A stretch of DNA of 64,000 bases, from IMG/VR virus record IMGVR_UViG_3300044796_000657, positions 1 to 64,000 of that record. One strand, written 5' to 3'. Numbering within the stretch: position 1 is the stretch's first letter; every line of letters begins with the position of its first letter. The translations under genes were made by a program, and so were the position numbers. Below are positions 11,566-59,322 of the stretch, piece by piece. The notes under the pieces are model-generated. The model saw nothing but the letters and a program-made list of their open reading frames with translations. It had not been told where the DNA came from and searched no databases.

Positions 11566-11638
11566 GACTTCGTAGCTCAGTTGGTAGAGCAGCAGACTTT
11601 TAATCTGCGGGTCGTGGGTTCAAGTCCCACCGGAGTCA
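11566..11638 (+). tRNA. trnK: tRNA-Lys (UUU)
   Basis: GACTTCG/CGGAGTC acceptor stem, GCTC/GAGC D stem, GCAGA-CTTTTAA-TCTGC anticodon arm, GTGGG-TTCAAGT-CCCAC T arm; CCA not encoded. Confidence 0.95.
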
Positions 11639-13190: not shown

Positions 13191-13263
13191 GCACCCGTAG
13201 CTCAACTGGAAGAGCAGCCGATTTCTACTCGGCAGGTTGGGGGTTCGAGTCCCTTCGGGTGTA
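13191..13263 (+). tRNA. trnR: tRNA-Arg (UCU)
   Basis: GCACCCG/CGGGTGT acceptor stem, GCTC/GAGC D stem, GCCGA-TTTCTAC-TCGGC anticodon arm, GGGGG-TTCGAGT-CCCTT T arm. Confidence 0.92.
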
Positions 13264-13282
13264 CTTTACAAGGAATGTTAAT

Positions 13283-24368: not shown

Positions 24369-24467
24369 TATTATTCCTTCGTTTTGTGTAATCCCTTAAC
24401 GTAGTAGTGAATATTGAAACCGCAAGACATTGCGGATATACTCGGTCTTCATTTACTGAGAAGTGCT

Positions 24468-24743
24468 ATGTCAAAAATTCCTTCAAAAGAGATGATAGTA
24501 GAAAAATTGGCAAAGATGTCATTGCAGGAATTGCTGGCACTGAAGGAATACGTCAAAACGGAATACGAGGCATGGCCGAGGGCGGGCACAAGAGTTAAGT
24601 GCAATACTGCGAATGCTTTTAGTATCTCTGACTGTGGAACGGTTATCTCAAAAGCGAACCGCAGTGGATTGAAAGTTGTCTTTGTCAAATTGGACAACGG
24701 TACCGAGGCGGGTTACAGGCTTGGAAACTTGGAGCCACTATGA
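24468..24743 (+). CDS. MNLNK-array member 1 (divergent N-terminus)
   Basis: KLAKMSLQELLALK helix + AGTRV...LEPL beta domain. Confidence 0.8.
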   Translation: MSKIPSKEMIVEKLAKMSLQELLALKEYVKTEYEAWPRAGTRVKCNTANAFSISDCGTVISKANRSGLKVVFVKLDNGTEAGYRLGNLEPL

Positions 24744-25000
24744 ACCTCAATAAAATCTCTCAGATGAAACCGAAGGAACTTCTTAAGATTCGAGAGCTTA
24801 TTGAAGCGGCCATTCTTCAAAAGGATTGGTGCGTTTGCGGAGCGAGAGTCAAGTTTAACCACGGCTTGCATTTGGGTCGGCGGGGCGAGGTAGTCGCCGT
24901 GCTTGCTTCCGGTACGAGAAGACTGGCAAACATCATGGTTAAGATTGACGGTGCCGAATCAGCCACCCATGCAACCAAAATGATCTTGGAGCCAGAATGA
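24740..25000 (+). CDS. MNLNK-array member 2
   Basis: MNLNKISQM..ELLKI; CGARV; ATGA overlap. Confidence 0.85.
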   Translation: MNLNKISQMKPKELLKIRELIEAAILQKDWCVCGARVKFNHGLHLGRRGEVVAVLASGTRRLANIMVKIDGAESATHATKMILEPE

Positions 25001-25293
25001 ACCTTAACAAGATCACAGTGATGTCCATCGGCGAGTTGCGGGCATTGGAAGATATTATCACCAAAACATTATCATCAAAACTCCAAGAGGTTTTTGTCGT
25101 TGGAGCACGTGTTAAGATTATTACCTCAGTAAGAGCAAGACCATATCCGGGCGGGTATAGTCATAATTATGACGGCCATTGTGGCGTCATAATAGATGTT
25201 CACAAGGGCACAAGTACCCATTGCGTGCGAACCGACGGCAACGCTGTCCTCTATTTTTATAATTGTGAACTGGAGTTGGTAAGTGAACCTTAA
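24997..25293 (+). CDS. MNLNK-array member 3
   Basis: MNLNKITVM..ELRAL; VGARV; ELELV. Confidence 0.85.
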   Translation: MNLNKITVMSIGELRALEDIITKTLSSKLQEVFVVGARVKIITSVRARPYPGGYSHNYDGHCGVIIDVHKGTSTHCVRTDGNAVLYFYNCELELVSEP

Positions 25294-25552
25294 CAAAATC
25301 TACGAAATGGACTCGGAGCAATTGCTGGCTTTGCAAACCATTGTCAGTGATGCTTTGAAAAAAAAGATGATCAAGTTCAAAGTCGGCGATAGAATCAAAA
25401 CGACATTGAAGCATTGGAGCAGACCGGCAATGTATGGCTTTGTGTTACAATTACCGTTCGCCCCCGGCGGCCCATACGTTATTAATTGTGATAATTCATT
25501 GGTTAGTAGAATGATGTATGATGATGAAATGGAGTTAGTCAATGAACCTTAA
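25283..25552 (+). CDS. MNLNK-array member 4
   Basis: GTG start; FKVGDRI; EMELV. Confidence 0.85.
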   Translation: MNLNKIYEMDSEQLLALQTIVSDALKKKMIKFKVGDRIKTTLKHWSRPAMYGFVLQLPFAPGGPYVINCDNSLVSRMMYDDEMELVNEP

Positions 25553-25718
25553 CAAAATCTACGAAATGGACTTGGATCAATTGGCGGCTTTGAAGGTCGT
25601 CGTAGACGACGCCATTGCTAAAAAAGAAAAAGAGAAAAAACAAAAAGAGAAAGATCAACGAATAAGTCGTGATTACAATAACGATTACGATTATTACAAT
25701 TACGATGGCTACAACTAG
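25542..25718 (+). CDS. MNLNK-array member 5 (58 aa, helix only, not in ORF track)
   Basis: MNLNKIYEMDLDQLAALK...; the beta domain is replaced by a DYNNDYDYYNYDGYN tail. Confidence 0.7.
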   Translation: MNLNKIYEMDLDQLAALKVVVDDAIAKKEKEKKQKEKDQRISRDYNNDYDYYNYDGYN

Positions 25719-25726
25719 GGGCTTCT

Positions 25727-26179
25727 ATGAACCTCAATAAACTGATGGAACTGGATGAAGAAGGTTTGTTGCTTGTGATTGTTTCACTTAATATGGAACT
25801 TTCCGAGCGATTCAAATCTTTCTGTCCCAAGCAATTCGCCGTCATTCGTAATGTTCCAGCACCGTACACTCGCTTCAATGGTTCGAAGTGTATCATACAA
25901 CAGGTCACCCCAAATAGTTGCCACGTAGATGTACCTCAAAAACACGCTTGGATGCCTTCCGAATTGGTAATAATACCAAACGAGTTTTTGTTTCTTCCAG
26001 ATGATGCCTACGCAACTTTGAGAGAACCAAAGTTTGCGGATATGGATTTTAAGCAACTGGAAATGTTAATGGGCCACGTTAATCAACTCATTAACGACAA
26101 AAGAGAAAAACTCAATCAAAGAAAAATAGAAGTTGTCAAGAAAATATCCTCTTACATGAAAATCCATGAACCTCAATAA
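25727..26179 (+). CDS. MNLNK-array member 6
   Basis: MNLNKLMEL; ELSERFK. Confidence 0.85.
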   Translation: MNLNKLMELDEEGLLLVIVSLNMELSERFKSFCPKQFAVIRNVPAPYTRFNGSKCIIQQVTPNSCHVDVPQKHAWMPSELVIIPNEFLFLPDDAYATLREPKFADMDFKQLEMLMGHVNQLINDKREKLNQRKIEVVKKISSYMKIHEPQ

Positions 26180-26549
26180 ACTCACTGAAATGGATGAAAA
26201 GACCTTACTCTCTTTGGGTAATAGTGTTTCCTTGGAACTTTCAGAGCGGTTCAAGATTTTTTACAAACGTCAATACGTTATCGTAAGAAACCATACGGCG
26301 AAATCTTACAACAATAGAACGGGAACCGTAGAAGCTCTTGGCGTAAATGATACTTACGTTTTTATGCACTCATATCCCCGTGACGGATTAGAGAAAATTT
26401 GGATACCAAATAAAAATATTGAACCTTTTCAAAGCATCCGCCTTCCAAAGTTATTCAACTTGGAACGTGAACAATTAATAGCTTTGGGAAAAAAGATTTT
26501 TAACATACATCATCAAAAGTGGCTAGAACGAGAAAACAAAAAACTATGA
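26166..26549 (+). CDS. MNLNK-array member 7
   Basis: MNLNKLTEM; ELSERFK. Confidence 0.85.
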   Translation: MNLNKLTEMDEKTLLSLGNSVSLELSERFKIFYKRQYVIVRNHTAKSYNNRTGTVEALGVNDTYVFMHSYPRDGLEKIWIPNKNIEPFQSIRLPKLFNLEREQLIALGKKIFNIHHQKWLERENKKL

Positions 26550-27106
26550 ATTTAAACAATTTGACGAACCTGACCTTTGCGCAATTTAACCAACTTGAAG
26601 ATGAAGTGACTTACCATTTGGCAAAGCGGTTCAAAATCTTCTTTAAGGAACAATTGGTTGTGGTAGTCGGCCTTGAGGCCGATTCTTCCCCCTCTGTTCT
26701 TGATCTTAATCTTGTCTCTCGGCTTGGCCGCATCATATCACCAAAATTAAGTGTTGATGGATATTACGATGTCAGCATTCACGATGTTGGCATTCTGATG
26801 TTCAAGCCATCGGAAATTGAACCAATCATACCTGATGACAACAGACATCCAGTTTTTGAAACGATGGACAAAGAGACACTTGAAGAGTTTTATGAATTAA
26901 TGAGTATTCAGTGGATGAAGAAATTAAGCTTACCTATCTTTAAGGTTGGTGATCGTGTTCAGGTAGTACATCCACATATTTGTCCAGAAGGATTGAACGG
27001 TACCATTGTCAAAGCACATTACCACGATACCAAATACAGTATTCTTTTTGACAAACTAATAGACATACCAGAAAAATTTGACGCAATGTTTGTGAGGGCA
27101 TTATGA
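26546..27106 (+). CDS. MNLNK-array member 8 (two fused modules)
   Basis: MNLNNLTNL...; second helix + FKVGDRV. Confidence 0.85.
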   Translation: MNLNNLTNLTFAQFNQLEDEVTYHLAKRFKIFFKEQLVVVVGLEADSSPSVLDLNLVSRLGRIISPKLSVDGYYDVSIHDVGILMFKPSEIEPIIPDDNRHPVFETMDKETLEEFYELMSIQWMKKLSLPIFKVGDRVQVVHPHICPEGLNGTIVKAHYHDTKYSILFDKLIDIPEKFDAMFVRAL

Positions 27107-27357
27107 ACCTGAATAAGTTAACTAAAATGTCCCGTGAGGAATTGCGAGCTGTTCAAGATTTCGTTGAACAACAATTACATCATCACCCGTTTCAAATTGG
27201 CGATAAAGTACGCAATCGATACGCACCCGAAGCGCATGGTATCATTATACGATCCCATAAAAGCGTCGGCAAAAAACCACGTTATTATTCCGTTTCATTT
27301 AATGGCAATCTCAATTATGTTTACGTTGACTTTGAAAACTTGGAGTTGGACAAATGA
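27103..27357 (+). CDS. MNLNK-array member 9
   Basis: MNLNKLTKM; FQIGDKV; NLEL. Confidence 0.85.
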   Translation: MNLNKLTKMSREELRAVQDFVEQQLHHHPFQIGDKVRNRYAPEAHGIIIRSHKSVGKKPRYYSVSFNGNLNYVYVDFENLELDK

Positions 27358-27602
27358 ACTTAAACAAGTTAGCTCAAATGAATACCAAGGAATTGCGGGC
27401 TATTCAAGAATTCATATCAGAATTATTGAAGCGTCCATTTAAGGTCGGCGATAAAGTGTGCAATCGGAGAATGCGTGTTAATAAGGGCATCATAACACAG
27501 CTTCATCCAAATGCCCCATTTAATATTTATTATTCTGTTCTTTGGAAAGAAACCCTTAATACATCTTTCGCAAATTTTGATGACTTGGAGTTAGATGAAT
27601 GA
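27354..27602 (+). CDS. MNLNK-array member 10
   Basis: MNLNKLAQM; FKVGDKV; DLEL. Confidence 0.85.
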   Translation: MNLNKLAQMNTKELRAIQEFISELLKRPFKVGDKVCNRRMRVNKGIITQLHPNAPFNIYYSVLWKETLNTSFANFDDLELDE

Positions 27603-27853
27603 ACCTGAATAAGTTAGCCGAAATGACTAACGGCGAATTGGTAAAAATCAAAATACTGATTGAGGCGGAATTGAATAAGCGACCATTGAAGATTGGGGAT
27701 AAAGTCAGACAACGTGAATTTGGAAAACAACCCAACGGCACCATCGTAGACATCAACGAACCACTTCAACTGTGTTGGGTATTAGTGAATGGAACCTCAG
27801 CAAAGACGTTCACGGCAGCAACCTCCTTGTATAACGTAATACTGGATTATTAA
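27599..27853 (+). CDS. MNLNK-array member 11
   Basis: MNLNKLAEM; LKIGDKV. Confidence 0.85.
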   Translation: MNLNKLAEMTNGELVKIKILIEAELNKRPLKIGDKVRQREFGKQPNGTIVDINEPLQLCWVLVNGTSAKTFTAATSLYNVILDY

Positions 27854-27854
27854 A

Positions 27855-28097
27855 ATGAACCTGAACAAACTAACCGAAATGACCAATGAGCAATTGTTTG
27901 CTATCAAACAATTCATTGAAGCTGAATTGCATAAGCGACCTTTGAAAGTCGGCGACAGGGTCAGTTACAAACTTGATAAAAAGAGATCCGTTGGTGTTGT
28001 TGAGGATATTGGTACGTTTGATTGTTTCATAACCTTCCGGCAATATGGAACAAGCCAACACAGAGTCAGAAAAGCAGATTTGGAATTAGTGGAGTGA
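27855..28097 (+). CDS. MNLNK-array member 12
   Basis: MNLNKLTEM; LKVGDRV; DLELVE. Confidence 0.85.
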   Translation: MNLNKLTEMTNEQLFAIKQFIEAELHKRPLKVGDRVSYKLDKKRSVGVVEDIGTFDCFITFRQYGTSQHRVRKADLELVE

Positions 28098-28197: not shown

Positions 28198-28533
28198 TTA
28201 AAAATGATACTCTAAAATTTCTTTAAGAAATTCTATAACTTTTACGGAATTTGCTTTCATTTTATCATGAACTAATCTGTGGCAATTAGGACAAACAATA
28301 ATAACATTACCTTTAACATATTCGCCCCCATCTTTACCGGGGACAATTCTGTGTCTGTCGCATTTAGATAAATTCCACCCGCAAATTTGACAAGAAAATT
28401 TTTGCCATTTTTTATGAGTTTTTAGGCATTTGTTTTTATGATGAGTACTACAAATATTTTTATATTTTCCATTCCCTTTACTTGTTGCTAAGTTTTTACA
28501 ATTTTCTATTGTGCAGGTTGGTCTTGTTTTCAT
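28198..28533 (-). CDS. HNH endonuclease
   Basis: CQICG...DRHRIVP..DGG.Y..GNVIIVCPNCHRLVH; much more AT-rich than its neighbours. Confidence 0.85.
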   Translation of the reverse strand: MKTRPTCTIENCKNLATSKGNGKYKNICSTHHKNKCLKTHKKWQKFSCQICGWNLSKCDRHRIVPGKDGGEYVKGNVIIVCPNCHRLVHDKMKANSVKVIEFLKEILEYHF

Positions 28534-45983: not shown

Positions 45984-47377
45984 AACGGGAAAGGTCACGA
46001 AGAAACCCCACGGAGAATCTCGTCTCCGTGGGGTCAACTTGCCGGTGATCGGGCAAAAATAATCAGGACACGGTGGTGAAGCGTTTCATGTTCATTCTCC
46101 TCTTGGCTATGCCCCCGAACTTGGGGCGGGTTTCAGGAAACGGGGAAAGTCTGGGTGATGTTCACAGGTTCGGTATCAGATGCCCATCAGCCTGTATGGT
46201 CACTCGTCTTGGTGTCTACCGGGCCGTTAGTGAGGAGGATCAACTCTGTCATTGGCAACTAGCACGCAGGCGACGATATTGGCGGTCGGCGGCGGCAAGT
46301 ATCAGTTAACCCTCGGAAGCGGCGTTGTCGTCATGGTTGCCGCTGTGATCGGGCCGGTTTTCGGTATCAGGCTAATGGGCATCCTCTGGAAAAAAAGAAG
46401 GAACAAAGCTACGGGAATGGGTTTGGTTTTTTCATGGCGTGGTCTTTCATATAGGTATGGCCCCGGCTTTTGACGCTGCCCACTCAGCACCTAGACACCG
46501 AAAGGGTATCATTAAGGGCCATTTACGGGTGTGGGACATGAGCGACACTAGCCAAAAACAGAACTTCTCGGCAACATGTTATTCTCCGCCGTTGAGGGTG
46601 TTGGGCGTTTCAAATGGGCCGGGATACTACTTCTCGCCTACCTAAGCGGCTCGTTTGTGTCCGGTCAGGCCCGAAGCGAGTTTTTACAATCTAGTCCCGG
46701 TCAGCACGGATGCCTATGCTAATGGAATACCAACCATTAGCACCTTGGCTCCGATGTCTGTTTAGGGAAATCCCGATGTGAACATCGTAGCACCATCCTT
46801 TCATTAGGTTTATACAATTCCGGGCTGCTTAACCATCCTGAATGTTCCCGACGACCCGTGAGGGCTATCTATCTCACGGCACTTACGCACGCCGGGAACT
46901 ACCCAAGATACTACCACGTACTCTTTGGCCTGTCAAGACCATTCTTCACAATTATCACGGTGTATGGTCACTCGCTGAACATCCGTATATCTTCGCTCTC
47001 TTGGCCGTTAACATCCACAACGTGACCATACAGAAAACTTGGCGTTCAACCCTTAGAGATCCATCAGGATTCCAGCCCTTTTTCATACTTTTCATTTTCA
47101 GTGGTGGGCTTGGAATTGACTGCATTGGCCTTTGAAATGGTTTCCGGTGGCAAAATGGTGGGGCGTGCGTTAGAATGTCAGACAGTAGACAAGAGGGGGC
47201 TAGTACCAACCCATAGAGACCCCCTTGACTTTCCCCGTCAATCCCCTACCATATCCTTTATGTACAATACAGTGGTATGCTCTTTAACGGCTTTTTCCTG
47301 TTAAATGGCACTTTGGGCTTGTCTAGGCTTTGGCATTCTGTACGATAGTCTTATGGTGTTAGTGGTGGGGGTTCGGT

Positions 47378-47572
47378 TCAGGCTAATGGGCATCCTCTGG
47401 CTGCGAGTATTAGGAAGGAGGTGATGATGATTAGGCCGACGAGGTGTCTTAGGTAGTTTGGCACTGTGTTTGCTGGTATTGTGCAAACGATAGTGAAGCA
47501 GGCGATCATTGCGATTGCTGCTAGGATTGTGATAGGGTTTTGGCGTATGATGGCCCAGAGTGTATTTTTCAT
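47378..47572 (-). CDS. Small two-TM membrane protein
   Basis: LWAIIRQNPITI...; two hydrophobic segments. Confidence 0.6.
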   Translation of the reverse strand: MKNTLWAIIRQNPITILAAIAMIACFTIVCTIPANTVPNYLRHLVGLIIITSFLILAARGCPLA

Positions 47573-47763
47573 TTTAATTTCTTGACTAGCCATATGAGGC
47601 ATAGGACTGAGAGGATTGTGAGTATGATTGATGCTGGTATTTTGTAGGGGTTGTGGAGTCTGTTAATGGTGACCATGTGTAGGATGAGGGTGACCCATAG
47701 CACGATGAGTGGTGATTTGGCGAAGGCTCTTGTGAGCATCCAGAGTCTAGTTCTTGTGTTCAT
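47569..47763 (-). CDS. Small two-TM membrane protein
   Basis: LWMLTRAFAKSPLIV... Confidence 0.6.
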   Translation of the reverse strand: MNTRTRLWMLTRAFAKSPLIVLWVTLILHMVTINRLHNPYKIPASIILTILSVLCLIWLVKKLK

Positions 47764-47803
47764 TTTCGGCACACTACATGCACAGTTGGCGTGGTGTTGG
47801 GTT

Positions 47804-47983
47804 TTAGCGGATTGTTGCGAGTGTGCCTTCTGCGTTTCTGAGTGTGATGCTGTAGTATCCTTTTGCTGTTGCTTTGAGCCACATTCTTCGGACATGGTTT
47901 TCGTTGCCGGATACAAGTGTAAATCCGGTGCCGTTCATTTCTTCTGCCATTCCGTAGTGGGCGATGATTTGGAACACGTTCAT
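47804..47983 (-). CDS. Hypothetical protein
   Basis: MNVFQIIAHYG...; 59 aa. Confidence 0.6.
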   Translation of the reverse strand: MNVFQIIAHYGMAEEMNGTGFTLVSGNENHVRRMWLKATAKGYYSITLRNAEGTLATIR

Positions 47984-47988
47984 TCTCT

Positions 47989-48213
47989 TTATTTGGTTCG
48001 TTTGGTTTGGTGTATGATTGTGATGATTAGGGTGATTATGCAGAGTGTAGCGATGCACACTGTGGTTATCCGTTGTCTTTCTGTGTATGGCAGTGGTATG
48101 TTAAGCATTGGTTGTAGTGCTAGGAATGACAGGACGAAGTAAGTAGCTGGTTGTTTGAGTGCAAGGTGTGCGAGTAGCCATAGGATGTTTTTGGGTGTAG
48201 GTTTGTATGGCAT
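47989..48213 (-). CDS. Small two-TM membrane protein
   Basis: LWLLAHLALKQPATY...; preceded by motif 2. Confidence 0.65.
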   Translation of the reverse strand: MPYKPTPKNILWLLAHLALKQPATYFVLSFLALQPMLNIPLPYTERQRITTVCIATLCIITLIITIIHQTKRTK

Positions 48214-48255
48214 TTGGTATGTCCTGTATGTTTTGGCACACTAGCTGCACACTTG

Positions 48256-48465
48256 TTAGGCTTTTTTGAGGTTGGCTTCGAGTTTTGCCATTTCGGCGGC
48301 GTGGTGTTTGCCTTGTTTGACACGGGCGTCTGCTATTGTGTGTGCGAGTTCTTTGGCGGCATCGACTTCATCGGGTTTGAGTTCCCCTCGTAGTGCCCGG
48401 TTGACCATGTTAAGTTCATCGGTGGCGAGAACCAGTTGGTATGTCATAAACATGTCAAGTCTCAT
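48256..48465 (-). CDS. Hypothetical protein
   Basis: AAGGA SD. Confidence 0.75.
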   Translation of the reverse strand: MRLDMFMTYQLVLATDELNMVNRALRGELKPDEVDAAKELAHTIADARVKQGKHHAAEMAKLEANLKKA

Positions 48466-48482
48466 TGTATTATTCCTTTTTG

Positions 48483-48893
48483 TTAGTCGTACCATGCTCT
48501 GAGGCAAGTTTCTGTGGATTCGTATTCGTCGGCATTCTTGAACATTGTCTTGAATGCTTTTTGGAGTTTTGGTGAGGCTTTTCCTTGGAGTGATATTTGT
48601 GAGATAGTGATACGGAAGTCGGGTCTTTCTTCCGTAACGACGTATCCATCGCCTTGTAGTTCCGGGTATTCTTCCATGAACTTAACTATTTCGGCGATTG
48701 TGGGGCCGTTGTTTTGTGATTCTTCGGGGTCTAGGAAACCTCTTTCAATGAGCAGTTTGATTGCGTTGAGTTTGAGGCCGTCGAACAGTGCGATACCTCC
48801 TCCGTATTGTGGCGTATCTCTTTGTGTTTCTTCGTGGTTCCATTTGACGCCGTTGGCGGTCATGAGTTCATCACGTTTGGCTTGTCTTTGCAT
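48483..48893 (-). CDS. Hypothetical protein
   Basis: AAGGA SD; ends ...RAWYD. Confidence 0.8.
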   Translation of the reverse strand: MQRQAKRDELMTANGVKWNHEETQRDTPQYGGGIALFDGLKLNAIKLLIERGFLDPEESQNNGPTIAEIVKFMEEYPELQGDGYVVTEERPDFRITISQISLQGKASPKLQKAFKTMFKNADEYESTETCLRAWYD

Positions 48894-48901
48894 TGTATTC
48901 C

Positions 48902-49159
48902 TTAGTGTTTGTAGCGGCTGTAGCTTTGTTGAACGTCTATGTGGATTTTTATTGCGATGTAGATTGCGTAGCTTGTGAAGGTGATTAGTCCCAAGCAAAG
49001 GATCAAGCCTGCTAGTGCTGAGATTTCGTTGGCGGTCTTTTTGGCTTTGGAGAGTTTGGTTATTGCTGCTGTGGTTAGCAGTGTGATGAAACCTATCACT
49101 GTGATAGTGAGTGTCAGGATGAGGTTATTGAGCAGTGTGTTAACTTCGTAGGATGTCAT
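48902..49159 (-). CDS. Two-TM membrane protein
   Basis: Two hydrophobic segments. Confidence 0.7.
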   Translation of the reverse strand: MTSYEVNTLLNNLILTLTITVIGFITLLTTAAITKLSKAKKTANEISALAGLILCLGLITFTSYAIYIAIKIHIDVQQSYSRYKH

Positions 49160-49214
49160 TGTTGTTCTCGTTTGAGGGTTTTGGGGAATTTCCCTTTATG
49201 TTAAGGGTGTATGG

Positions 49215-49457
49215 TCACTGTGATTTGTAGGTTGCTTGTCCTACGTTAAATCCTTTGGCGAAGCCTTCGAGTTTGTGGTTGATTTCCTTGATTTGTTCGG
49301 GTGTGAGTTCGTTGAGTGAGAGAAATGCGATTGCGTATCCCTCTTTGAAGTGTGCGGTGAAGTGTGCACCGCTACTTCTGAATGTTTCGGTGGCGAATTC
49401 GATGAGTGCGTTGGCTTGATTGTAATTCAAGCCTTTGAGTGTGGTTTGGTAATTCAC
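49215..49457 (-). CDS. Cassette ORFan
   Basis: GGAGAG SD + GTG; TGA stop inside the site. Confidence 0.75.
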   Translation of the reverse strand: MNYQTTLKGLNYNQANALIEFATETFRSSGAHFTAHFKEGYAIAFLSLNELTPEQIKEINHKLEGFAKGFNVGQATYKSQ

Positions 49458-49972
49458 AGTCTCTCCTTTACGCAGATGCAGGTGAAGGTATGTCCCTTGT
49501 GGGAATCGTCGATGGTTTTTTGGAAGATTTCTTCTGCCCATTCATCGATATTGTGTTGGTGGACTGTTGTGATATTAACGTATTTCCCTCTGTGGGTTGG
49601 TCGGTTGTCCATTGAGCTGGACTGGTATCGTACGATGATACTTGTGGGATCTTGGAATTTGTCTACGGTTTGGATGATTTTGGATTTTCTGAGGGCTTGG
49701 GCGAGGAGTTCGGGTGAGGATTGGTATTGTAGTTCTTCTGCCCAACCGCCGATAGCGAGCATGAAACCGAAGGCGTGGATGTGGATTTTGAGTTGTAGGA
49801 TGTTTTCGTAGGGGATTGTTTCCTTGTTAATTTTGATGGTTTGTTTGTTGTCGGAGTTTTGTTTGAGTTTGCCTTTGTAGGTTCTGTTGTCTTTTGTTGT
49901 GAGGGTGACGAGGTGTCCTGTCAGCTTTGTGGCATCTTGATCGTTGAACGGGATTTTGGCGAAGTTTTGCAT
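49454..49972 (-). CDS. Cassette ORFan with N-terminal Sm/RimP-like beta segment
   Basis: GHLVTLTT..NRTYKGKL...IPYENI; GGGGA SD. Confidence 0.75.
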   Translation of the reverse strand: MQNFAKIPFNDQDATKLTGHLVTLTTKDNRTYKGKLKQNSDNKQTIKINKETIPYENILQLKIHIHAFGFMLAIGGWAEELQYQSSPELLAQALRKSKIIQTVDKFQDPTSIIVRYQSSSMDNRPTHRGKYVNITTVHQHNIDEWAEEIFQKTIDDSHKGHTFTCICVKERL

Positions 49973-50004
49973 GGTTGTTTCCCCTTTATTTTAAGGGTGT
50001 ATGG

Positions 50005-50271
50005 TCACTTGATTTCTTGGATGTGGAAAGGTTTGACTGTGGCGACGAGTCTTGTGCCGATGCCTAGTGTATCTCTCATGATTTGTGCGGCTTCTCCGAG
50101 TGGTCCGCTACTTGTTTTGAGCATGGTGTCGAGTAGTTTGGCACGGTCGGCGCATTTCTGTTTGGCTTTGGGGTCTTTATCGGGATTTGGGAATACGCAA
50201 ACGTCTTGAGTTTGTCGGTATTGTCCGTTTCCGATGGCGTAGGTGATGATAACGCAGCAGTAGGATTCCAT
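50005..50271 (-). CDS. Cassette ORFan
   Basis: AAGGA SD; TGA stop inside the site. Confidence 0.75.
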   Translation of the reverse strand: MESYCCVIITYAIGNGQYRQTQDVCVFPNPDKDPKAKQKCADRAKLLDTMLKTSSGPLGEAAQIMRDTLGIGTRLVATVKPFHIQEIK

Positions 50272-50315
50272 TGGTATTTTCCTTAGTGCCTCTTGGTAAC
50301 CATGAGGGTGTATGG

Positions 50316-50621
50316 TCACCGTCTAGCTCGGTAGAAGTGTGTTGTGTGGCTTGCTTTGGGGCCGAGCTGGTATCCCAACTGGAAAAATTCGTGGTGATCG
50401 GCGGGTGTGCTGGTGTAGCCTATGGAGGGCTTGTATTTCCAATAGAAGCCGGGTTGTGATTCTATGTGTATCTTAACGATTTCAATGAGGTTTTCGGTTT
50501 TATCCTTGTGGTCGATCATTATGAGTGTATCGCCCGGTTTCAGGATACTGAGTTTGATGATACGTCGTTGTTTGCGGTATCCGTTTGTGGGGCGTCCGAG
50601 TTCATAGGTTCTGTTTGCCAT
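50316..50621 (-). CDS. Cassette ORFan, paralog of 51683-51979
   Basis: RTY..GR.T.GYRK...L..GDTLIMIDH..KTENLIE; TGA stop inside the site. Confidence 0.8.
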   Translation of the reverse strand: MANRTYELGRPTNGYRKQRRIIKLSILKPGDTLIMIDHKDKTENLIEIVKIHIESQPGFYWKYKPSIGYTSTPADHHEFFQLGYQLGPKASHTTHFYRARR

Positions 50622-50835
50622 TGTTAACCTTTGATGAATTTGTCTTCGGTGATTGAGCAATCGTGCCAGCCGAAGGAATCCAACCAGAGATAGTGTCCCG
50701 GTTGTTTGGGGTCTTCGGTGATTGTTCGTTTGCCTAAGTGTGGCAGTGTGATTGTCATTTGGTTCTCCTTGAAAGTAGGTGGTTTAGGTCTGCCGTATCC
50801 TTGCTTTTATGGTTTTCTTTGACACCGCAACCCGG

Positions 50836-51240
50836 TTAACCGTACTCTGCCATATTAGCGGCTATTAGATTGTTGTGTGCTTCGGCGAGGCATTGGCAGG
50901 TTCCGCATTCGGATGTAGGCAGGATGGGTGCGTCGAGTTTGTTTTTGTCGTCAAATTGTTTGCCTGCTTTGGCTTGACGGATTTCGTTTTCCGTGTATTC
51001 CGCTGTACATCCGCAGGGGCAGAATTGGACGGTGTATCGTTCTTCGGTGAGTTGGATGATGCATTCGTTGAAGAGTTCGTCGTCTCCTACTTTGGTTCGT
51101 CCAGTAGTGACTTTGTGGATTTTGCCGTGGTAGGAGTGTTGTAGGCCGCTGTCTCTGGTGATGACGGTAGCGGTTTGTCCTTCGAATTTGTCGGCGGTTT
51201 CGAAGGTGAAGGGGTCGGTGAGCGAGTAGTAGTGTCGCAT
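50836..51240 (-). CDS. Hypothetical protein with Cys motifs
   Basis: GAGG SD; CPCGC and CGTCQC. Confidence 0.75.
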   Translation of the reverse strand: MRHYYSLTDPFTFETADKFEGQTATVITRDSGLQHSYHGKIHKVTTGRTKVGDDELFNECIIQLTEERYTVQFCPCGCTAEYTENEIRQAKAGKQFDDKNKLDAPILPTSECGTCQCLAEAHNNLIAANMAEYG

Positions 51241-51418
51241 TGTTAACCTCGTAGTTTGGCGATGGCGGTTGGGGCGATGGCAATGAGCAGCAGGACGATC
51301 ATGAGTACGAACACCATACTCATCCAAAAGACGACCTTAAGTTCCTCTTGGACTCTTTTGAGTTGGGATTGTAGGGCTTCGATTTCGGCTTTTTGTGCTG
51401 CTAGTTCTTCTTGAATGG

Positions 51419-51649
51419 TCATTGGATTCCTGCCAGTTGGTTAATGAGTTCGTCGGCGTCGGTGTTTGTATCGTGGCAGAACTTAGCGAAGTCGGCTTCG
51501 AAGTTTGTGGCGAAGAATTCTATTTGGTGACTGCCGCCTTGACCAGAGTTGTAGACTTCGGCAACGGGGGTGTCATTGAGTGTGAGGATTGCTCCGAGAG
51601 TGTAGGAGTATTCGCCCTTTTGTTTCTCTGCGTGTTGGAGTTTATACAT
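51419..51649 (-). CDS. Hypothetical protein
   Basis: 76 aa. Confidence 0.7.
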   Translation of the reverse strand: MYKLQHAEKQKGEYSYTLGAILTLNDTPVAEVYNSGQGGSHQIEFFATNFEADFAKFCHDTNTDADELINQLAGIQ

Positions 51650-51682
51650 GGCTTAAGTTCGTTTGGTGAAGGTTCCTAGATC

Positions 51683-51979
51683 CTAGTAAGCCATTGCTTT
51701 GTGGAAGTAGGTGTTTTTGTTAAGGTCGTTGGCCCAAGTGAACGATTCTTGGTTCAGGCCGGGGCAGGGTGTGTTGTGTTTGTCTTGTTTGTATTTCCAT
51801 GCGAATCCTTTGGATGGGGATTCTCGAAGTTCGGTGACTTCGATGAGGTTTTCGGTTTTGCCGTCGTGGTCAATCATGATGAGGGTATCGCCCACTTGGA
51901 GCAATTTCATCTTGGTGACCCGTTTGGTTTTGCGGTATCCGGCTGTGGAACGTCCAGCATCGTAGGTTCGCTTGGCCAT
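51683..51979 (-). CDS. Cassette ORFan, paralog of 50316-50621
   Basis: GGGGA SD; same conserved blocks. Confidence 0.8.
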   Translation of the reverse strand: MAKRTYDAGRSTAGYRKTKRVTKMKLLQVGDTLIMIDHDGKTENLIEVTELRESPSKGFAWKYKQDKHNTPCPGLNQESFTWANDLNKNTYFHKAMAY

Positions 51980-52164
51980 TTTGTTTCCCCTGTGTTAACA
52001 ATAAGGGTGTATGGTCACTGGAATGTGATGGTGTAGTATTCGTCCGTATATTTGCCGTTTTGTTGTGCGGAGGACTTCGGCTTGTTTATTTGAATCGAAC
52101 ATTTTGGTTAGGTCTGGGGCATTGTGGTAGCCGAGAACTTTGTGGTTGAAAATTTGGAACATAG

Positions 52165-52425
52165 TTAATCCTCAATGGGTTTAATGGGTTCAACGTACGG
52201 CTTCCAGTTTTTGACCTGTTCGCCGTTCATCCATCGTCCTTCATCTTGGTAGAGATTGAAGATTTGGCCGGAGGTTTTGAGGGCTAGGGCTTTGGCCTTA
52301 GTGGATTCTGTGTCGAGAATGTGGCCGTGGCTGTTTTTGAGTGCCCATTTATTGCCGTGTTTTTCGACTGTCCACTTTTCGGGTGGGTCGGCATCGTGTT
52401 CGGCTTTGGTGAGATGGAGTGCCAT
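52165..52425 (-). CDS. Hypothetical protein
   Basis: MALHLTKAEHDA... Confidence 0.7.
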   Translation of the reverse strand: MALHLTKAEHDADPPEKWTVEKHGNKWALKNSHGHILDTESTKAKALALKTSGQIFNLYQDEGRWMNGEQVKNWKPYVEPIKPIED

Positions 52426-52552
52426 TTTAGTTGTACCAACGGGTGACAATGAAACGCTGATCAATGACATCGTAAATAAGTTCGGCGGCGGTGCGGATTG
52501 TGGCATTCGGCTTACGCAAGTGAATAATGAGCATTTACCGTGTCTCTTGGGG

Positions 52553-52828
52553 TTAAAACTGCTTGGTGGGGTTTTCGGCGTTCCATTGCTTTTTGGCTTT
52601 GAGGAATGTCAACTTAATGTCTTGTAGCTGAAACCAGATTTTGAATGCGAGCAGGTTTTGGGGGCAGGTGCCGAGCGTGCCCCGTATTACTTCACCGTCA
52701 AGAGTGAAGGTTCCATCGGTACCGTAGTCGTCAAGCCTTGCCGCCGAGGATACTGATGCCCGTAACGATGCCGTAGTATCCTCGATTGTGGAAGGCTGCG
52801 AGCTTGATGTTAAACTGAACAGCATCAC
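52553..52828 (-). CDS. Hypothetical protein
   Basis: 91-aa ORF. Confidence 0.55.
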   Translation of the reverse strand: MMLFSLTSSSQPSTIEDTTASLRASVSSAARLDDYGTDGTFTLDGEVIRGTLGTCPQNLLAFKIWFQLQDIKLTFLKAKKQWNAENPTKQF

Positions 52829-52873
52829 CTATCTTCAACCCTGTGTATTCAGTTTTGCGGGCGGCTGCGTTTT

Positions 52874-53263
52874 TCATAGTTGCTCATAAATGAGGAACAA
52901 TTGAACTTTGATTCTTTTGATGGTTTGGTGTCCCATGCCACTCAATGGCGGATTCATCCAGTATTTCCACTCACCATCATAAATCATTTTTGAAACTTCA
53001 TCGTATTTTGCTTGGGGGTGAGAACGCAATGTACTCTTCATATTGGCATCAAAGCGTTCATCAACTGCCTCTTTGATGGTTTGAAAGCAAGCGGTGAGTG
53101 TGGGGAATTTTCCTTTCCATTCAATGGGTTTGTCAGGCAGTGTTTCAGGGTTAACATCATGGAGATGGTTTGACCATACTTCCCACAATGCTTGACCTTG
53201 ATTCATGAACTGCCCATTGAGCAGGTCAATGATTGCACACTTGAATTTTTCCTTAGTATCCAT
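52874..53263 (-). CDS. Hypothetical protein
   Basis: 129 aa. Confidence 0.75.
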   Translation of the reverse strand: MDTKEKFKCAIIDLLNGQFMNQGQALWEVWSNHLHDVNPETLPDKPIEWKGKFPTLTACFQTIKEAVDERFDANMKSTLRSHPQAKYDEVSKMIYDGEWKYWMNPPLSGMGHQTIKRIKVQLFLIYEQL

Positions 53264-59094: not shown

Positions 59095-59322
59095 GGTAGA
59101 TTCCTTGTGGATGTTAACGGTAGATTGTGGATGTCGCCAACCAATGTAACAGGGAAGATCCATTGGCATGACTGGTTCTCAAAATATAAGGAGGTCTTGG
59201 ATGGAACAGAAAAAGAAGCCACCTCGCATGAAAACCATAAAGCGGTTCCCCGATGGATACGCTTTACATTCGTGGGTTTCTTCCGTCAGTATGTCATAGT
59301 AAATGGCGTTCATGGCAATCCT

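What the first reader, a model, noticed from the sequence alone, without database searches (positions are those of the whole stretch)
24468..28097. Twelve-gene MNLNK array: constant N-terminal helix, variable SH3/KOW-like domain
Seen: 12 consecutive co-oriented ORFs, 11 beginning MNLN(K/N). Most overlap the previous stop (ATGA, or a stop inside ATGAACCTTAA, giving EP* or EPQ* ends). Each has a ~30-aa helix (KLxxMxxxELxAIxxxIxxxL) followed by F/LK(V/I)GD(R/K)V...ELE(L/V), with highly divergent interiors. One member is helix-only and one carries two modules. Inference: the helix resembles the oligomerisation segment of H-NS-like proteins and the GDRV unit resembles SH3/KOW barrels. A translationally coupled library of hetero-oligomerising binders could serve as a diversified anti-defence or host-takeover toolkit. 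The conserved junction DNA could drive expansion by recombination.
Basis: partly seen in the sequence, partly recalled or inferred. Interest (0 to 1): 0.75.

Follow-up and report, generated by a model that had tools for sequence, protein, structure and literature searches.

The report
Twelve-gene helix–KOW-barrel array, huge phage
A roughly 430-kb phage from peat carries an operon of twelve overlapping small genes, all copies of one module (a conserved MNLNK amphipathic helix plus a very variable KOW/Tudor-type beta-barrel) seen in no other public sequence; it is a real orphan gene family with a common fold and an untested function.

Summary
Twelve co-oriented ORFs fill 24468-28097. Eleven start MNLN(K/N), one of them on GTG, and 9 of 11 junctions overlap by 4-14 nt. 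The signature occurs nowhere else in the 430-kb genome.

Every member is recognised by an HMM built from the others (E <= 1.5e-3). The signal sits in the helix: barrel-only HMMs fail. An AF2 model of m9 (pLDDT 84.5) shows a helix plus a five-stranded SH3-like barrel. Its nearest solved folds are Tudor, KOW and DfrB (Z 7.7-8.7). Profile hits to Spt5 and uL24 KOW domains are marginal (E 1e-3 to 1e-2). No Pfam, PHROG or NCBIfam threshold is met.

New details:
- m6 and m7 are helix-barrel-helix, m8 is two full modules, and m5 is a helix plus simple-repeat DNA.
- Neighbouring copies are more alike, which fits local duplication.
- The C-terminal L-E codons encode the GGAG ribosome-binding site of the next gene.
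- MNLNK is conserved as protein; its synonymous sites vary.

No relatives were found in 1.84 billion protein representatives, IMG/VR, JGI/ENA metagenome contigs or GTDB genomes.

The H-NS likeness is unsupported. Hetero-oligomerisation is untested, because the complex prediction gave no answer. An anti-defence role remains speculation. Best reading: a coupled panel of diversified KOW-like binding modules that share a docking helix.

The parts
24414..24442 (+). Promoter-like site (TTGAAA-17-TATACT) in the 100-nt divergent intergenic region upstream of m1. It is a candidate operon promoter only.
   Evidence: 10 of 12 matches. The number of such sites in the region is not above the shuffle expectation, so this is a consensus match and not evidence of function.
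24468..24743 (+). m1, 91 aa: helix plus barrel (GTRV). It lacks MNLNK. An alternative start at ATG 24492 (MIVEKLAKM) is in register with the family.
   Evidence: Leave-one-out HMM E 5e-4.
24740..25000 (+). m2, 86 aa: MNLNK helix plus barrel (GARV). ATGA overlap with m1.
   Evidence: Leave-one-out E 1e-7.
24997..25293 (+). m3, 98 aa: MNLNK helix plus a barrel with a long loop insertion. ATGA overlap.
   Evidence: Leave-one-out E 2.5e-9.
25283..25552 (+). m4, 89 aa: GTG start, MNLNK helix plus GDRI barrel. 11-nt overlap, with the m3 stop inside GTGAACCTTAA.
   Evidence: Leave-one-out E 4e-11.
25542..25718 (+). m5, 58 aa: helix only. Its head shares 30 nt of exact identity with m4. Its tail (25620-25714) is low-complexity sequence built of short DNA tandem repeats. 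It is probably a truncated copy.
   Evidence: (D3: 76 nt, 86% identity to the m3/m4 junction). Leave-one-out E 3e-7 over residues 1-28.
25727..26179 (+). m6, 150 aa: MNLNK helix, divergent barrel (K-x-Q-x-V-x-V type), then a second internal helix with a helical tail. It ends ...HEPQ*, 14 nt inside m7.
   Evidence: BLASTP to m7 E 3e-16. Profile-profile comparison with the canonical members 94% probability, E 9e-8.
26166..26549 (+). m7, 127 aa: the same helix-barrel-helix layout as m6.
   Evidence: In the ESM Atlas model, residues 27-91 match small KOW and NdhS barrels (TM by hit 0.71-0.81).
26546..27106 (+). m8, 186 aa: two complete modules (MNLNN helix, divergent barrel, internal helix, GDRV barrel). 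It reads as a fusion of two units.
   Evidence: SH3_12 hit at 25.4 bits against a cut-off of 26.2 on residues 132-170. ESM Atlas model pTM 0.70, with tandem KOW, Tudor and KIN17-SH3 neighbours. My own AF2 run failed (pLDDT 40).
27103..27357 (+). m9, 84 aa: canonical module and the member modelled. Short helix at 4-7, helix at 11-26, five strands at 35-82.
   Evidence: AF2 pLDDT 84.5, pTM 0.60. Fold searches.
27354..27602 (+). m10, 82 aa: canonical module. ATGA overlap, with GGAG 10 nt upstream inside the L-E codons of m9.
   Evidence: 46% identical to m9.
27599..27853 (+). m11, 84 aa: canonical module. ATGA overlap.
27855..28097 (+). m12, 80 aa: canonical module and last gene. It starts 1 nt after the m11 stop. 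No intrinsic terminator was detected downstream.
   Evidence: No terminator (fold z-score +1.4).

Best explanation
This is a lineage-specific operon of twelve paralogous small proteins in a ~430-kb tailed phage from peat.

Shown. All members derive from one ~85-aa module. The module has a short N-terminal cap (MNLNK), an amphipathic alpha-helix with an S/T/D-x-x-E/Q-L capping box, and a five-stranded KOW/Tudor-type SH3-like beta-barrel. The array grew by local tandem duplication. It was then remodelled by fusion (m8 has two modules; m6 and m7 have a module plus an orphan helix) and by truncation (m5 is a helix plus slippage-generated simple sequence). The genes overlap by 4-14 nt. In six junctions the GGAG ribosome-binding site of the next gene is encoded by the conserved C-terminal Leu-Glu codons of the previous one.

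Inferred. The array is translated as one coupled unit, in roughly fixed proportions. The residues conserved in the barrel are core or turn residues (G-D/x-R/K-V, G-x-I/V, L-E-L). The loops and strand surfaces differ so much that the barrels alone are no longer recognisably related by sequence. The N-terminal helix is held by selection at the protein level.

Most likely working model (inferred). The helix is a common docking or association element, either among members or with one shared partner. The barrels are a diversified panel of small binding modules. By analogy with KOW domains (NusG, Spt5, uL24, MutS2) and with the small SH3-like early proteins of T4 (MotB, GoF, MotB.1, Frd.2), the likeliest targets are nucleic acids or the host transcription, translation or nucleoid machinery during takeover.

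I am fairly sure of the anatomy and history (about 0.85). I am much less sure of the functional part (about 0.3).
For: Family and uniqueness: (leave-one-out E <= 1.5e-3 for all members; barrels alone E 0.015 to >100).

Fold: AF2 of m9, pLDDT 84.5. VIA-align Z 8.7 Tudor, 8.4 DfrB, 8.1 Spt5 KOW, 7.8 NusG KOW. Foldseek against PDB, AFDB, BFVD and Swiss-Prot. ESM Atlas models of m7 and m8. Profile hits to Spt5 (E 1e-3) and uL24 (E 0.01).

The divergent m6-m8 modules are homologous to the canonical ones: hhalign 94%, E 9e-8.

Tandem duplication: adjacent modules are 38% identical against 29% for non-adjacent ones, permutation p 0.011. m4 and m5 share a recent 76-nt junction at 86% identity.

Coupling: overlaps and GGAG sites.

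Protein-level constraint on MNLNK: the codons vary at synonymous sites (AAC/AAT, CTC/CTT/CTG/TTA, AAA/AAG).

Phage context: TerL, tRNAs, aaRS and PolIII alpha, and no cellular KOW proteins.

The analogous T4 proteins are described in PMC7827196 and PMC12152347.
Against: There is no direct evidence of expression. The metatranscriptome run holds the region only as a long contig of uniform depth that spans genes of both strands, which could be DNA carry-over.

The complex prediction for m9+m10 gave no answer, so association through the helix is unsupported.

Only m9 (AF2) and m7 and m8 (ESM Atlas) have usable models. The barrels of m1-m4 are assigned by alignment only.

With no relatives outside this phage, neither selection (dN/dS) nor copy-number dynamics could be measured. 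Extreme barrel divergence could therefore mean relaxed constraint rather than diversification.

The SH3-like fold is generic and implies no particular ligand. pI ranges from 4.9 to 9.7, so the members are not uniformly basic as a nucleic-acid binder set might be.
Confidence: 0.55

Rival explanations
1. The constant N-terminal segment is a targeting or recognition peptide, and the barrels are cargo. One version resembles the capsid-targeting sequence shared by the otherwise diverse T4 internal proteins, which are loaded into the prohead and injected as anti-restriction factors. The other resembles the amphipathic leader of double-glycine-type exported peptides, which are recognised by a C39 peptidase.
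For: The layout is a constant N-terminus with variable bodies in a tandem array. PMC3012670 describes T4 internal proteins as a highly diverse defence set sharing only a CTS.

(L/I)-x-E at residues 6-8 occurs in 6 of 11 members (sequences), which resembles the T4 prohead-protease site.

The helix carries M/L-S-x-x-E/Q-L-x-x-I/L/V in 9 of 15 helices, with hydrophobic residues at 3, 6, 9, 14 and 17. This is the spacing of positions -18, -15, -12, -7 and -4 in double-glycine leaders (my own knowledge of that consensus).

There is a sub-threshold hit to NF047798 leader_Chryseo (E 0.04-0.08).

The phage encodes a stand-alone Peptidase_C39 with catalytic motifs (52 bits). No canonical GG-leader substrate was found elsewhere in the genome.
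Against: No member has G-G/A/S at the position where a double-glycine site would lie (sequences).

The (L/I)-x-E motif is absent from 5 of 11 members.

Internal copies of the helix (m6, m7, m8) lack MNLNK and cannot act as N-terminal signals, yet they are retained.

No prohead protease was detected with PF03420 or PF04586. This is weak evidence: for PF03420 the control genomes did not ring either.

The C39 gene lies about 400 kb away on the record, and C39-like folds also occur in cell-wall hydrolases (my own knowledge).

The leader hit is far below its cut-off (13-14.5 bits against 23.5).
Confidence: 0.15
2. The paralogues are subunits of one defined hetero-oligomeric assembly, such as an Sm/LSm-like ring or a DfrB-like tetramer of SH3-type barrels, rather than a panel of independent binders.
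For: An N-terminal helix followed by five bent strands is also the Sm/LSm layout. T4 early proteins with LSm-like folds are described in PMC12152347.

DfrB, an SH3-like homotetramer of ~78 aa, is among the best fold matches (Z 8.4).

Tight translational coupling suits stoichiometric subunits.
Against: No Sm, LSm or Hfq chain appears in the top 50 of either PDB search.

There is no PF06442 (DfrB) or LSm hit at E <= 1.

Member sizes and architectures are heterogeneous (58 to 186 aa; one, one and a half, or two modules), which is awkward for a regular ring.

The complex prediction gave no support.
Confidence: 0.1
3. The array is an evolutionary by-product. A duplication-prone small gene expanded by unequal crossing-over, and most copies are drifting or decaying with no collective function.
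For: m5 is a truncated copy with a slippage-made tail. m6 and m7 have lost a second barrel. The barrels are too divergent to detect by sequence. Junction microhomologies of 10-30 nt exist. Four assemblies of the phage show 0-1 SNP, so nothing indicates ongoing diversification.
Against: All twelve frames are open over 58-186 codons in 60% A+T DNA. Start, overlap and ribosome-binding-site features are kept at most junctions. MNLNK and the helix pattern are conserved despite synonymous change. The core barrel residues persist. These are signs of purifying selection on most copies.
Confidence: 0.15

Closest known systems
KOW domains of NusG, Spt5, uL24 and MutS2 (Pfam PF00467 and the SH3-like 'translation proteins' superfamily)
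   Same: Both are five-stranded SH3-like barrels with a G-D-x-V first strand and a G-x-(I/V) second strand. Solved KOW domains are among the best fold matches (Z 7.7-8.1). There are marginal profile hits to Spt5 and uL24 (E 1e-3 to 1e-2). As in NusG and MutS2, a helix or linker precedes the barrel.
   Different: No member reaches the Pfam KOW model, even at E <= 1. There is no NGN, ribosomal or MutS context. These are stand-alone ~85-aa proteins with their own conserved N-terminal helix, in twelve tandem copies.
Small SH3-like early proteins of phage T4: MotB (KOW plus OB; binds DNA and alters H-NS repression; PMC7827196) and the LSm-like GoF, MotB.1 and Frd.2 family (PMC12152347)
   Same: These are small phage-specific proteins with KOW/LSm-type barrels and no homologues outside their phage group. 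They lie in non-essential regions and are implicated in nucleic-acid or host-takeover functions. The language-model feature search put m8 nearest to motB clusters (0.87, a lead only).
   Different: There is no sequence match to PF17613 motB. There is no OB domain. The T4 genes are single and dispersed, with no shared N-terminal signature, and are not a coupled tandem array.
T4 internal proteins sharing a capsid-targeting sequence (PMC3012670)
   Same: Both are sets of divergent proteins united by a conserved N-terminal segment. Both are candidates for an arms-race toolkit.
   Different: The T4 CTS is a ~10-aa cleaved peptide on unrelated bodies. Here the conserved part is a ~28-aa helix, the bodies share one fold, and the cleavage-like motif is present in only 6 of 11. 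No packaging evidence exists.
Double-glycine leader peptides of class II bacteriocins and RiPP precursors (for example NF047798)
   Same: Both have the L/M-S-x-x-E-L-x-x-I motif and hydrophobic periodicity, and both occur as tandem genes with a constant leader and a variable remainder. A C39 peptidase is encoded in the same genome.
   Different: There is no Gly-Gly site. The score is well below the model cut-off. The 'core' is a folded 55-aa barrel rather than a short peptide. No transporter was identified.
Single-barrel orphan proteins of phages and prophages (for example B. subtilis SPbeta YorP, PDB 2heq, and many 50-60-aa mycobacteriophage proteins in BFVD)
   Same: They have the same bare SH3-like barrel (Z 7.0 to YorP; BFVD TM by hit up to 0.87). 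Function is unknown there as well.
   Different: They lack the MNLNK helix and are not expanded into arrays. No sequence relation was detected.

Membership tests
KOW domain (PF00467) | Match to the KOW motif model at the Pfam gathering score | tested here: not met
   There is no PF00467 hit at E <= 1 for any of the 12 proteins. PF00467 finds nothing in the whole 430-kb genome at E <= 0.1, while it rings in all 14 control genomes.
KOW domain (PF00467) | Five-stranded SH3-like barrel superposable on solved KOW domains | tested here: met
   AF2 model of m9 against Spt5 and NusG KOW: Z 7.7-8.1, rmsd 1.6-2.0 over 49-54 residues. Tudor, DfrB and PWWP score equally well, so the fold alone does not single out KOW.
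KOW domain (PF00467) | Significant profile-level sequence similarity to KOW-containing proteins | tested here: inconclusive
   Family profile against PDB sequences: Spt5 E 9.6e-4 (22 bits), uL24 E 0.009-0.05.
Xrn1-type SH3-like domain (PF18129 SH3_12) | Score at or above the gathering cut-off | tested here: not met
   Only the second barrel of m8 hits, at 25.4 bits against a cut-off of 26.2. The other members give no hit.
H-NS N-terminal oligomerisation domain (PF22470) | The constant N-terminal helix matches the H-NS dimerisation segment | tested here: not met
   The single hit is 15.4 bits (cut-off 24.5) on m6 residues 103-144, which is the extra C-terminal helix. No N-terminal helix gives a hit.
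T4 MotB (PF17613) | Sequence match to the motB model | tested here: not met
   No hit at E <= 1. There is only a language-model feature similarity of 0.86-0.87 with 148-151 shared features, below the level the tool calls reliable.
DfrB type II dihydrofolate reductase (PF06442) | Sequence match to DHFR_2 | tested here: not met
   No hit at E <= 1. Fold similarity only (Z 8.4, 20% identity).
Double-glycine leader peptides (for example NF047798) | L-S-x-x-E-L-x-x-I helix motif | tested here: met
   [LIVMF][STDN]xx[EQ][LM]xx[IVLM] is present in 9 of the 15 helices.
Double-glycine leader peptides (for example NF047798) | Gly-Gly/Ala/Ser cleavage site two residues after the conserved Ile, and model score above cut-off | tested here: not met
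   Positions 19-20 are never G-G/A/S (sequences). Score is 13.3-14.5 bits against a cut-off of 23.5.
Double-glycine leader peptides (for example NF047798) | A cognate C39 peptidase that processes the members | not testable with these tools
   A stand-alone Peptidase_C39 exists in the genome (52.3 bits).
T4-type capsid-targeted internal proteins | Conserved N-terminal peptide ending in an (L/I)-x-E protease site | tested here: inconclusive
   The N-terminus is conserved in 11 of 12 members. (L/I)-x-E at residues 6-8 is present in 6 of 11 (sequences).
T4-type capsid-targeted internal proteins | Prohead protease in the genome, and presence of the proteins in virions | tested here: inconclusive
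   PF03420 and PF04586 find nothing. For PF03420 no control genome rang, and this genome is highly divergent. Virion content is not testable here.
Sm/LSm/Hfq | Closest structural neighbours are Sm-fold proteins | tested here: not met
   The topology is compatible: N-terminal helix plus five strands. No Sm, LSm or Hfq chain is in the top 50 of Foldseek-PDB or VIA-align wide.

The most novel reading that the evidence does not exclude
The MNLNK helix is a shared address tag that a single phage or host partner reads, for example a capsid or scaffold receptor, the phage's own C39-type peptidase, or a host RNA polymerase or ribosome site. The twelve barrels are then a phage-encoded, in-genome library of KOW-like effector heads delivered through that one port. 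This would be a modular 'one handle, many heads' counter-defence or takeover system not described for phages.
Probability: 0.15. Interest if true: 0.7.

Novelty: new variant of a known kind. Interest (0 to 1): 0.42.

Why it matters
Huge phages are full of orphan genes, and lineage-specific multigene families are among the few handles on what those genes do.

This array is the largest paralogous family in its 430-kb genome: BLASTP at E 1e-5 links only m9-m12, and the family HMM ties in the other members. It pairs a segment under clear protein-level constraint (MNLNK plus the helix) with a fold-preserving but sequence-scrambled binding domain.

If the helix proves to be a common docking element, the locus would be a compact natural example of combinatorial diversification of a KOW/Tudor-type scaffold by a virus. 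It would also be a source of small binders against host machinery.

If the copies are inert, the locus is still a clean example of how tandem duplication, fusion and slippage build and erode gene arrays in very large phage genomes.

The dual use of the C-terminal Leu-Glu codons as the next gene's ribosome-binding site shows how coupling signals can masquerade as conserved protein motifs.

Tried and rejected
1. AF2 of the two-module m8 with a 3-row alignment gave pLDDT 40 and is unusable. A 9-row alignment meant to help was mis-aligned by MAFFT and was not used.

2. Complex prediction of m9+m10 returned 'no answer', and the controls were not run. It counts neither for nor against binding.

3. 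Reads. The RNA run holds the locus only as a 14.9-kb contig of flat depth across both strands. There is no evidence of transcription, variants or joints.

4. Relatives.
- The word-indexed search of 5.8 billion clusters returned only the window's own proteins.
- In the full HMM scan of 1.84 billion representatives, all full-length hits were the window's own. The rest were long multi-repeat SH3-like proteins matching only profile positions ~24-70. Only the best 150 of 735 hits are visible, so weak single-module relatives could be hidden.
- IMG/VR by single proteins m10 and m7 and by the neighbouring helicase gave nothing.
- The tandem-start DNA pattern gave 3 unrelated loci in IMG/VR.
- In metagenomes it gave 77 loci, mostly (about 50 fermentation-metagenome contigs) CRISPR arrays whose repeat happens to translate as MNLNKGCIEI, the rest short unrelated ORFs; none matches the family HMM.
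- Stricter patterns gave 0 hits in GTDB genomes and in IMG/VR.
- A single-gene signature gave 2 chance hits.

5. Pfam, PHROGs and NCBIfam gave no hit at threshold. Rfam gave nothing on the locus.

6. No terminator was found after m12.

7. DfrB enzyme, Sm ring and H-NS-like readings were considered and set aside (see the membership tests).

8. dN/dS was not attempted. Paralogues are 20-46% identical, so synonymous sites are saturated, and the four assemblies differ by at most one synonymous SNP.

9. Hallmark checks. Terminase_6C, HK97 capsid and sheath Pfam models found nothing, but Terminase_6N did.

Full report
OBSERVATION. The window region 24468-28097 holds twelve consecutive + strand ORFs, here called m1 to m12.
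- Ten begin ATG-MNLN(K/N).
- m4 encodes the same peptide from a GTG start.
- m1 begins MSKIPSKE, but its internal MIVEKLAKM (ATG 24492) aligns in register with MNLNKLxxM of the others.

Junctions are six 4-nt ATGA overlaps, two 11-nt overlaps with the stop inside (A/G)TGAACCTTAA (hence ...EP*), one 14-nt overlap (...HEPQ*), and two small gaps of 8 nt and 1 nt.

The peptide MNLN[KN] occurs nowhere else in any frame of the 430,229-bp genome. A family HMM finds nothing else there. In leave-one-out tests each member is recognised by an HMM of the remaining ones (E 9e-18 to 1.5e-3 against the 7,825 six-frame segments of the genome).

CONTEXT. The window is bases 1-64000 of an IMG/VR virus record of 430 kb. 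The record is flagged as a provirus and is 97% complete by CheckV.
- The same locus occurs on JGI and Logan peat-metagenome contigs with 0-1 SNP.
- The genome encodes a large terminase, tRNAs, a class I aminoacyl-tRNA synthetase, PolIII alpha, a DEAD helicase and NAD synthase. It has no cellular KOW proteins. It is a huge tailed phage.
- Most neighbours are orphans.
- The array is a + strand island. Three - strand genes lie upstream. A - strand HNH endonuclease, a zinc-ribbon protein, a UvrD-like helicase and a ParB-like protein lie downstream.
- A sigma-70-like site sits 26 nt before m1, but such sites are not enriched. No terminator follows m12.
- Array G+C is 39.9% against 43.0% for the genome, the 11th percentile. 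It is therefore not a compositional outlier.

ANATOMY. The AF2 model of m9 (pLDDT 84.5, pTM 0.60) has a short helix at 4-7, a helix at 11-26 and five strands at 35-82. The barrel (residues 28-84) matches the following:
- a Tudor domain (Z 8.7), DfrB (8.4), PWWP (8.2), Spt5 and NusG KOW (7.7-8.1), chromo domains, YorP and others;
- the same set by Foldseek;
- many uncharacterised 50-60-aa phage proteins.

The family profile hits Spt5 KOW (E 1e-3) and uL24 (E 0.01) among PDB sequences. No Pfam, PHROG or NCBIfam family is reached. The best is SH3_12 at 25.4 bits against a cut-off of 26.2 on the second barrel of m8.

In the scan of 1.84 billion representatives, the barrel part of the profile picks up long proteins made of 4-18 SH3-like repeats. 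All full-length matches are the window's own proteins.

MODULE VARIANTS. m6, m7 and the first half of m8 share a divergent barrel (R-F-K-x-F-x-K-x-Q-x-V-x-V).
- This sub-family is homologous to the canonical module (hhalign 94%, E 9e-8).
- The ESM Atlas model of m7 resembles KOW and NdhS barrels.
- All three then continue with '(I/L)-P-(N/D)...R-x-P-(K/V)-(F/L)' and a second helix that repeats the N-terminal pattern.
- In m8 a GDRV barrel follows, making two full modules. Its Atlas model (pTM 0.70) resembles tandem KOW, Tudor and KIN17-SH3 arrangements.
- m6 and m7 end in helical tails instead.
- m5 is a helix only. Its first 30 nt after the start base are identical to m4. Its tail is built of 6-15-nt DNA tandem repeats.
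- In total there are 15 helices and 12 barrels.

WHAT IS CONSERVED. Pairwise identity of the helix is 38%, or 27% without MNLNK. Whole modules are 18-46% identical. Barrel-only leave-one-out HMMs fail (E 0.015 to >100), whereas full-length ones succeed. The family signal therefore lies in MNLNK plus the helix pattern (L3, L/I6, M9, an S/T/D-x-x-E/Q-L box, I/V17, I/V20-21, L25).

In the barrel only core or turn residues persist: G-D/x-R/K-V, G-x-I/V, and the final L-E-L. The MNLNK codons differ at synonymous sites, so the constraint is on the peptide and not on the DNA.

The penultimate Leu-Glu codons (TTGGAG, CTGGAG or ATGGAG) supply GGAG 8-11 nt before the next start in six junctions. Part of the 'ELEL' conservation may therefore serve translation of the downstream gene. 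m12 has no downstream gene and keeps L-E-L with GAA, so the motif is also protein-level.

HISTORY. Adjacent modules are more alike than distant ones (38% against 29%; permutation p 0.011). Clusters are m9-m12, m6-m8 and m4/m5. This fits local tandem duplication.

The m3|m4 and m4|m5 junction regions share 76 nt at 86% identity. This indicates a recent unequal exchange whose end points lie inside genes. Other junctions share only 10-18 nt of exact identity. That is microhomology at best, so 'junction DNA drives expansion' is weakly supported.

FUNCTION. Nothing here measures function. The reads were uninformative on transcription, and the m9+m10 complex prediction gave no answer.

The most economical model is as follows. 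A coupled operon yields fixed proportions of small proteins. They share a helix under selection, which acts as a docking or association element. They differ in a KOW/Tudor-type binding barrel.

Three orphan helices are retained in frame: m5 and the second helices of m6 and m7. This hints that the helix does something on its own rather than merely packing on its barrel. This is inference.

Named analogues of the fold bind nucleic acids or the transcription and translation machinery. T4 has small early KOW/LSm-like proteins of this sort: MotB (PMC7827196) and GoF, MotB.1 and Frd.2 (PMC12152347). A role in host takeover is therefore plausible but unproven.

RIVALS.
(a) Targeting tag. T4 internal proteins are a diverse defence set sharing only a capsid-targeting sequence (PMC3012670).
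- Here (L/I)-x-E follows MNLNK in 6 of 11 members.
- The helix also carries the L-S-x-x-E-L-x-x-I part of double-glycine leaders (9 of 15 helices), with a sub-threshold hit to a bacteriocin leader model.
- The phage encodes a stand-alone C39 peptidase.
- Against this, there is never a Gly-Gly site, the internal helices cannot be N-terminal signals, and no prohead protease was detected.

(b) A defined hetero-oligomer, Sm-like or DfrB-like. No Sm or Hfq neighbours were found, there is no DfrB sequence match, and member sizes are heterogeneous.

(c) Neutral expansion and decay. m5 and the truncations fit this reading. The preserved frames, coupling signals and helix argue for selection on most copies.

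NOVELTY. The fold is common, and tandem paralogue arrays are known in large phages. The family itself has no detectable relative in any collection searched. A twelve-gene coupled array with one constrained helix and a sequence-scrambled KOW-like barrel is a new variant of a known kind.

Its SH3/KOW inference is supported. Its H-NS analogy is not. Its functional proposal remains open.

Noticed in passing
G000:C1:428764-429366 (+) = L094:4765-5367; weaker copy at G000:C1:409314-409727 (-): There is a stand-alone 200-aa Peptidase_C39 (52.3 bits, over cut-off) with Q..SCGAACL and HYVV catalytic-type motifs. No N-terminal double-glycine-leader ORF was found anywhere in the 430-kb genome, so its substrate is unknown. 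A link to the leader-like MNLNK helix is possible but untested.
   Followed up: partly
L094:3699-4778 (+): A 359-aa ORF lies just upstream of the C39 peptidase and overlaps it. It has a long Gly/Pro/Met-rich low-complexity N-terminal part (MGMGMGM...GPGPGG). A Pro/Gly-rich ORF is also open on the opposite strand.
   Followed up: no
window 46000-53000: Base skew is strong (GC skew +0.25 to +0.31, AT skew -0.35 to -0.39, preceded by GC skew -0.27 at 44-46 kb). There are no tandem repeats or Rfam matches. The - strand genes here have an unusually A+C-rich sense strand.
   Followed up: partly
window 53308-59169 (-): A 1953-aa ORF, the longest in the genome, has no Pfam match.
   Followed up: no
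window 28198-28533 (-): An HNH endonuclease gene (PF01844, E 1.4e-7) converges on the 3' end of the array, 100 nt from the m12 stop. In one assembly the gene caller did not call it, although the DNA is identical.
   Followed up: partly
window 11566-11638 and 13191-13264 (+): tRNA-Lys(ttt) and tRNA-Arg(tct) genes lie in the + strand block upstream. Elsewhere the genome encodes a class I aminoacyl-tRNA synthetase, PolIII alpha, NAD synthase and a GT4 glycosyltransferase.
   Followed up: no
L018-L090 (ENA fermentation-metagenome contigs, e.g. L021, L055, L079): The DNA pattern for tandem MNLNK starts picks up long CRISPR arrays, with up to 34 matches in 11 kb and a ~66-nt period. Their repeat happens to translate as MNLNKGCIEI. 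They are unrelated to the family and are a caution for motif-based scans.
   Followed up: yes
L004:10371-10613 (-), L005:10910-11430 (+), L058: IMG/VR and JGI contigs carry two or three tandem genes that also start MNLNKI(S/N). These continue as SVWNSV-type serine/valine/tryptophan repeats. They form an unrelated small tandem family.
   Followed up: partly
window 25356-25366: An A8 homopolymer run lies inside m4 (codons for KKK), just after the helix. It could be a slippage-prone site.
   Followed up: no
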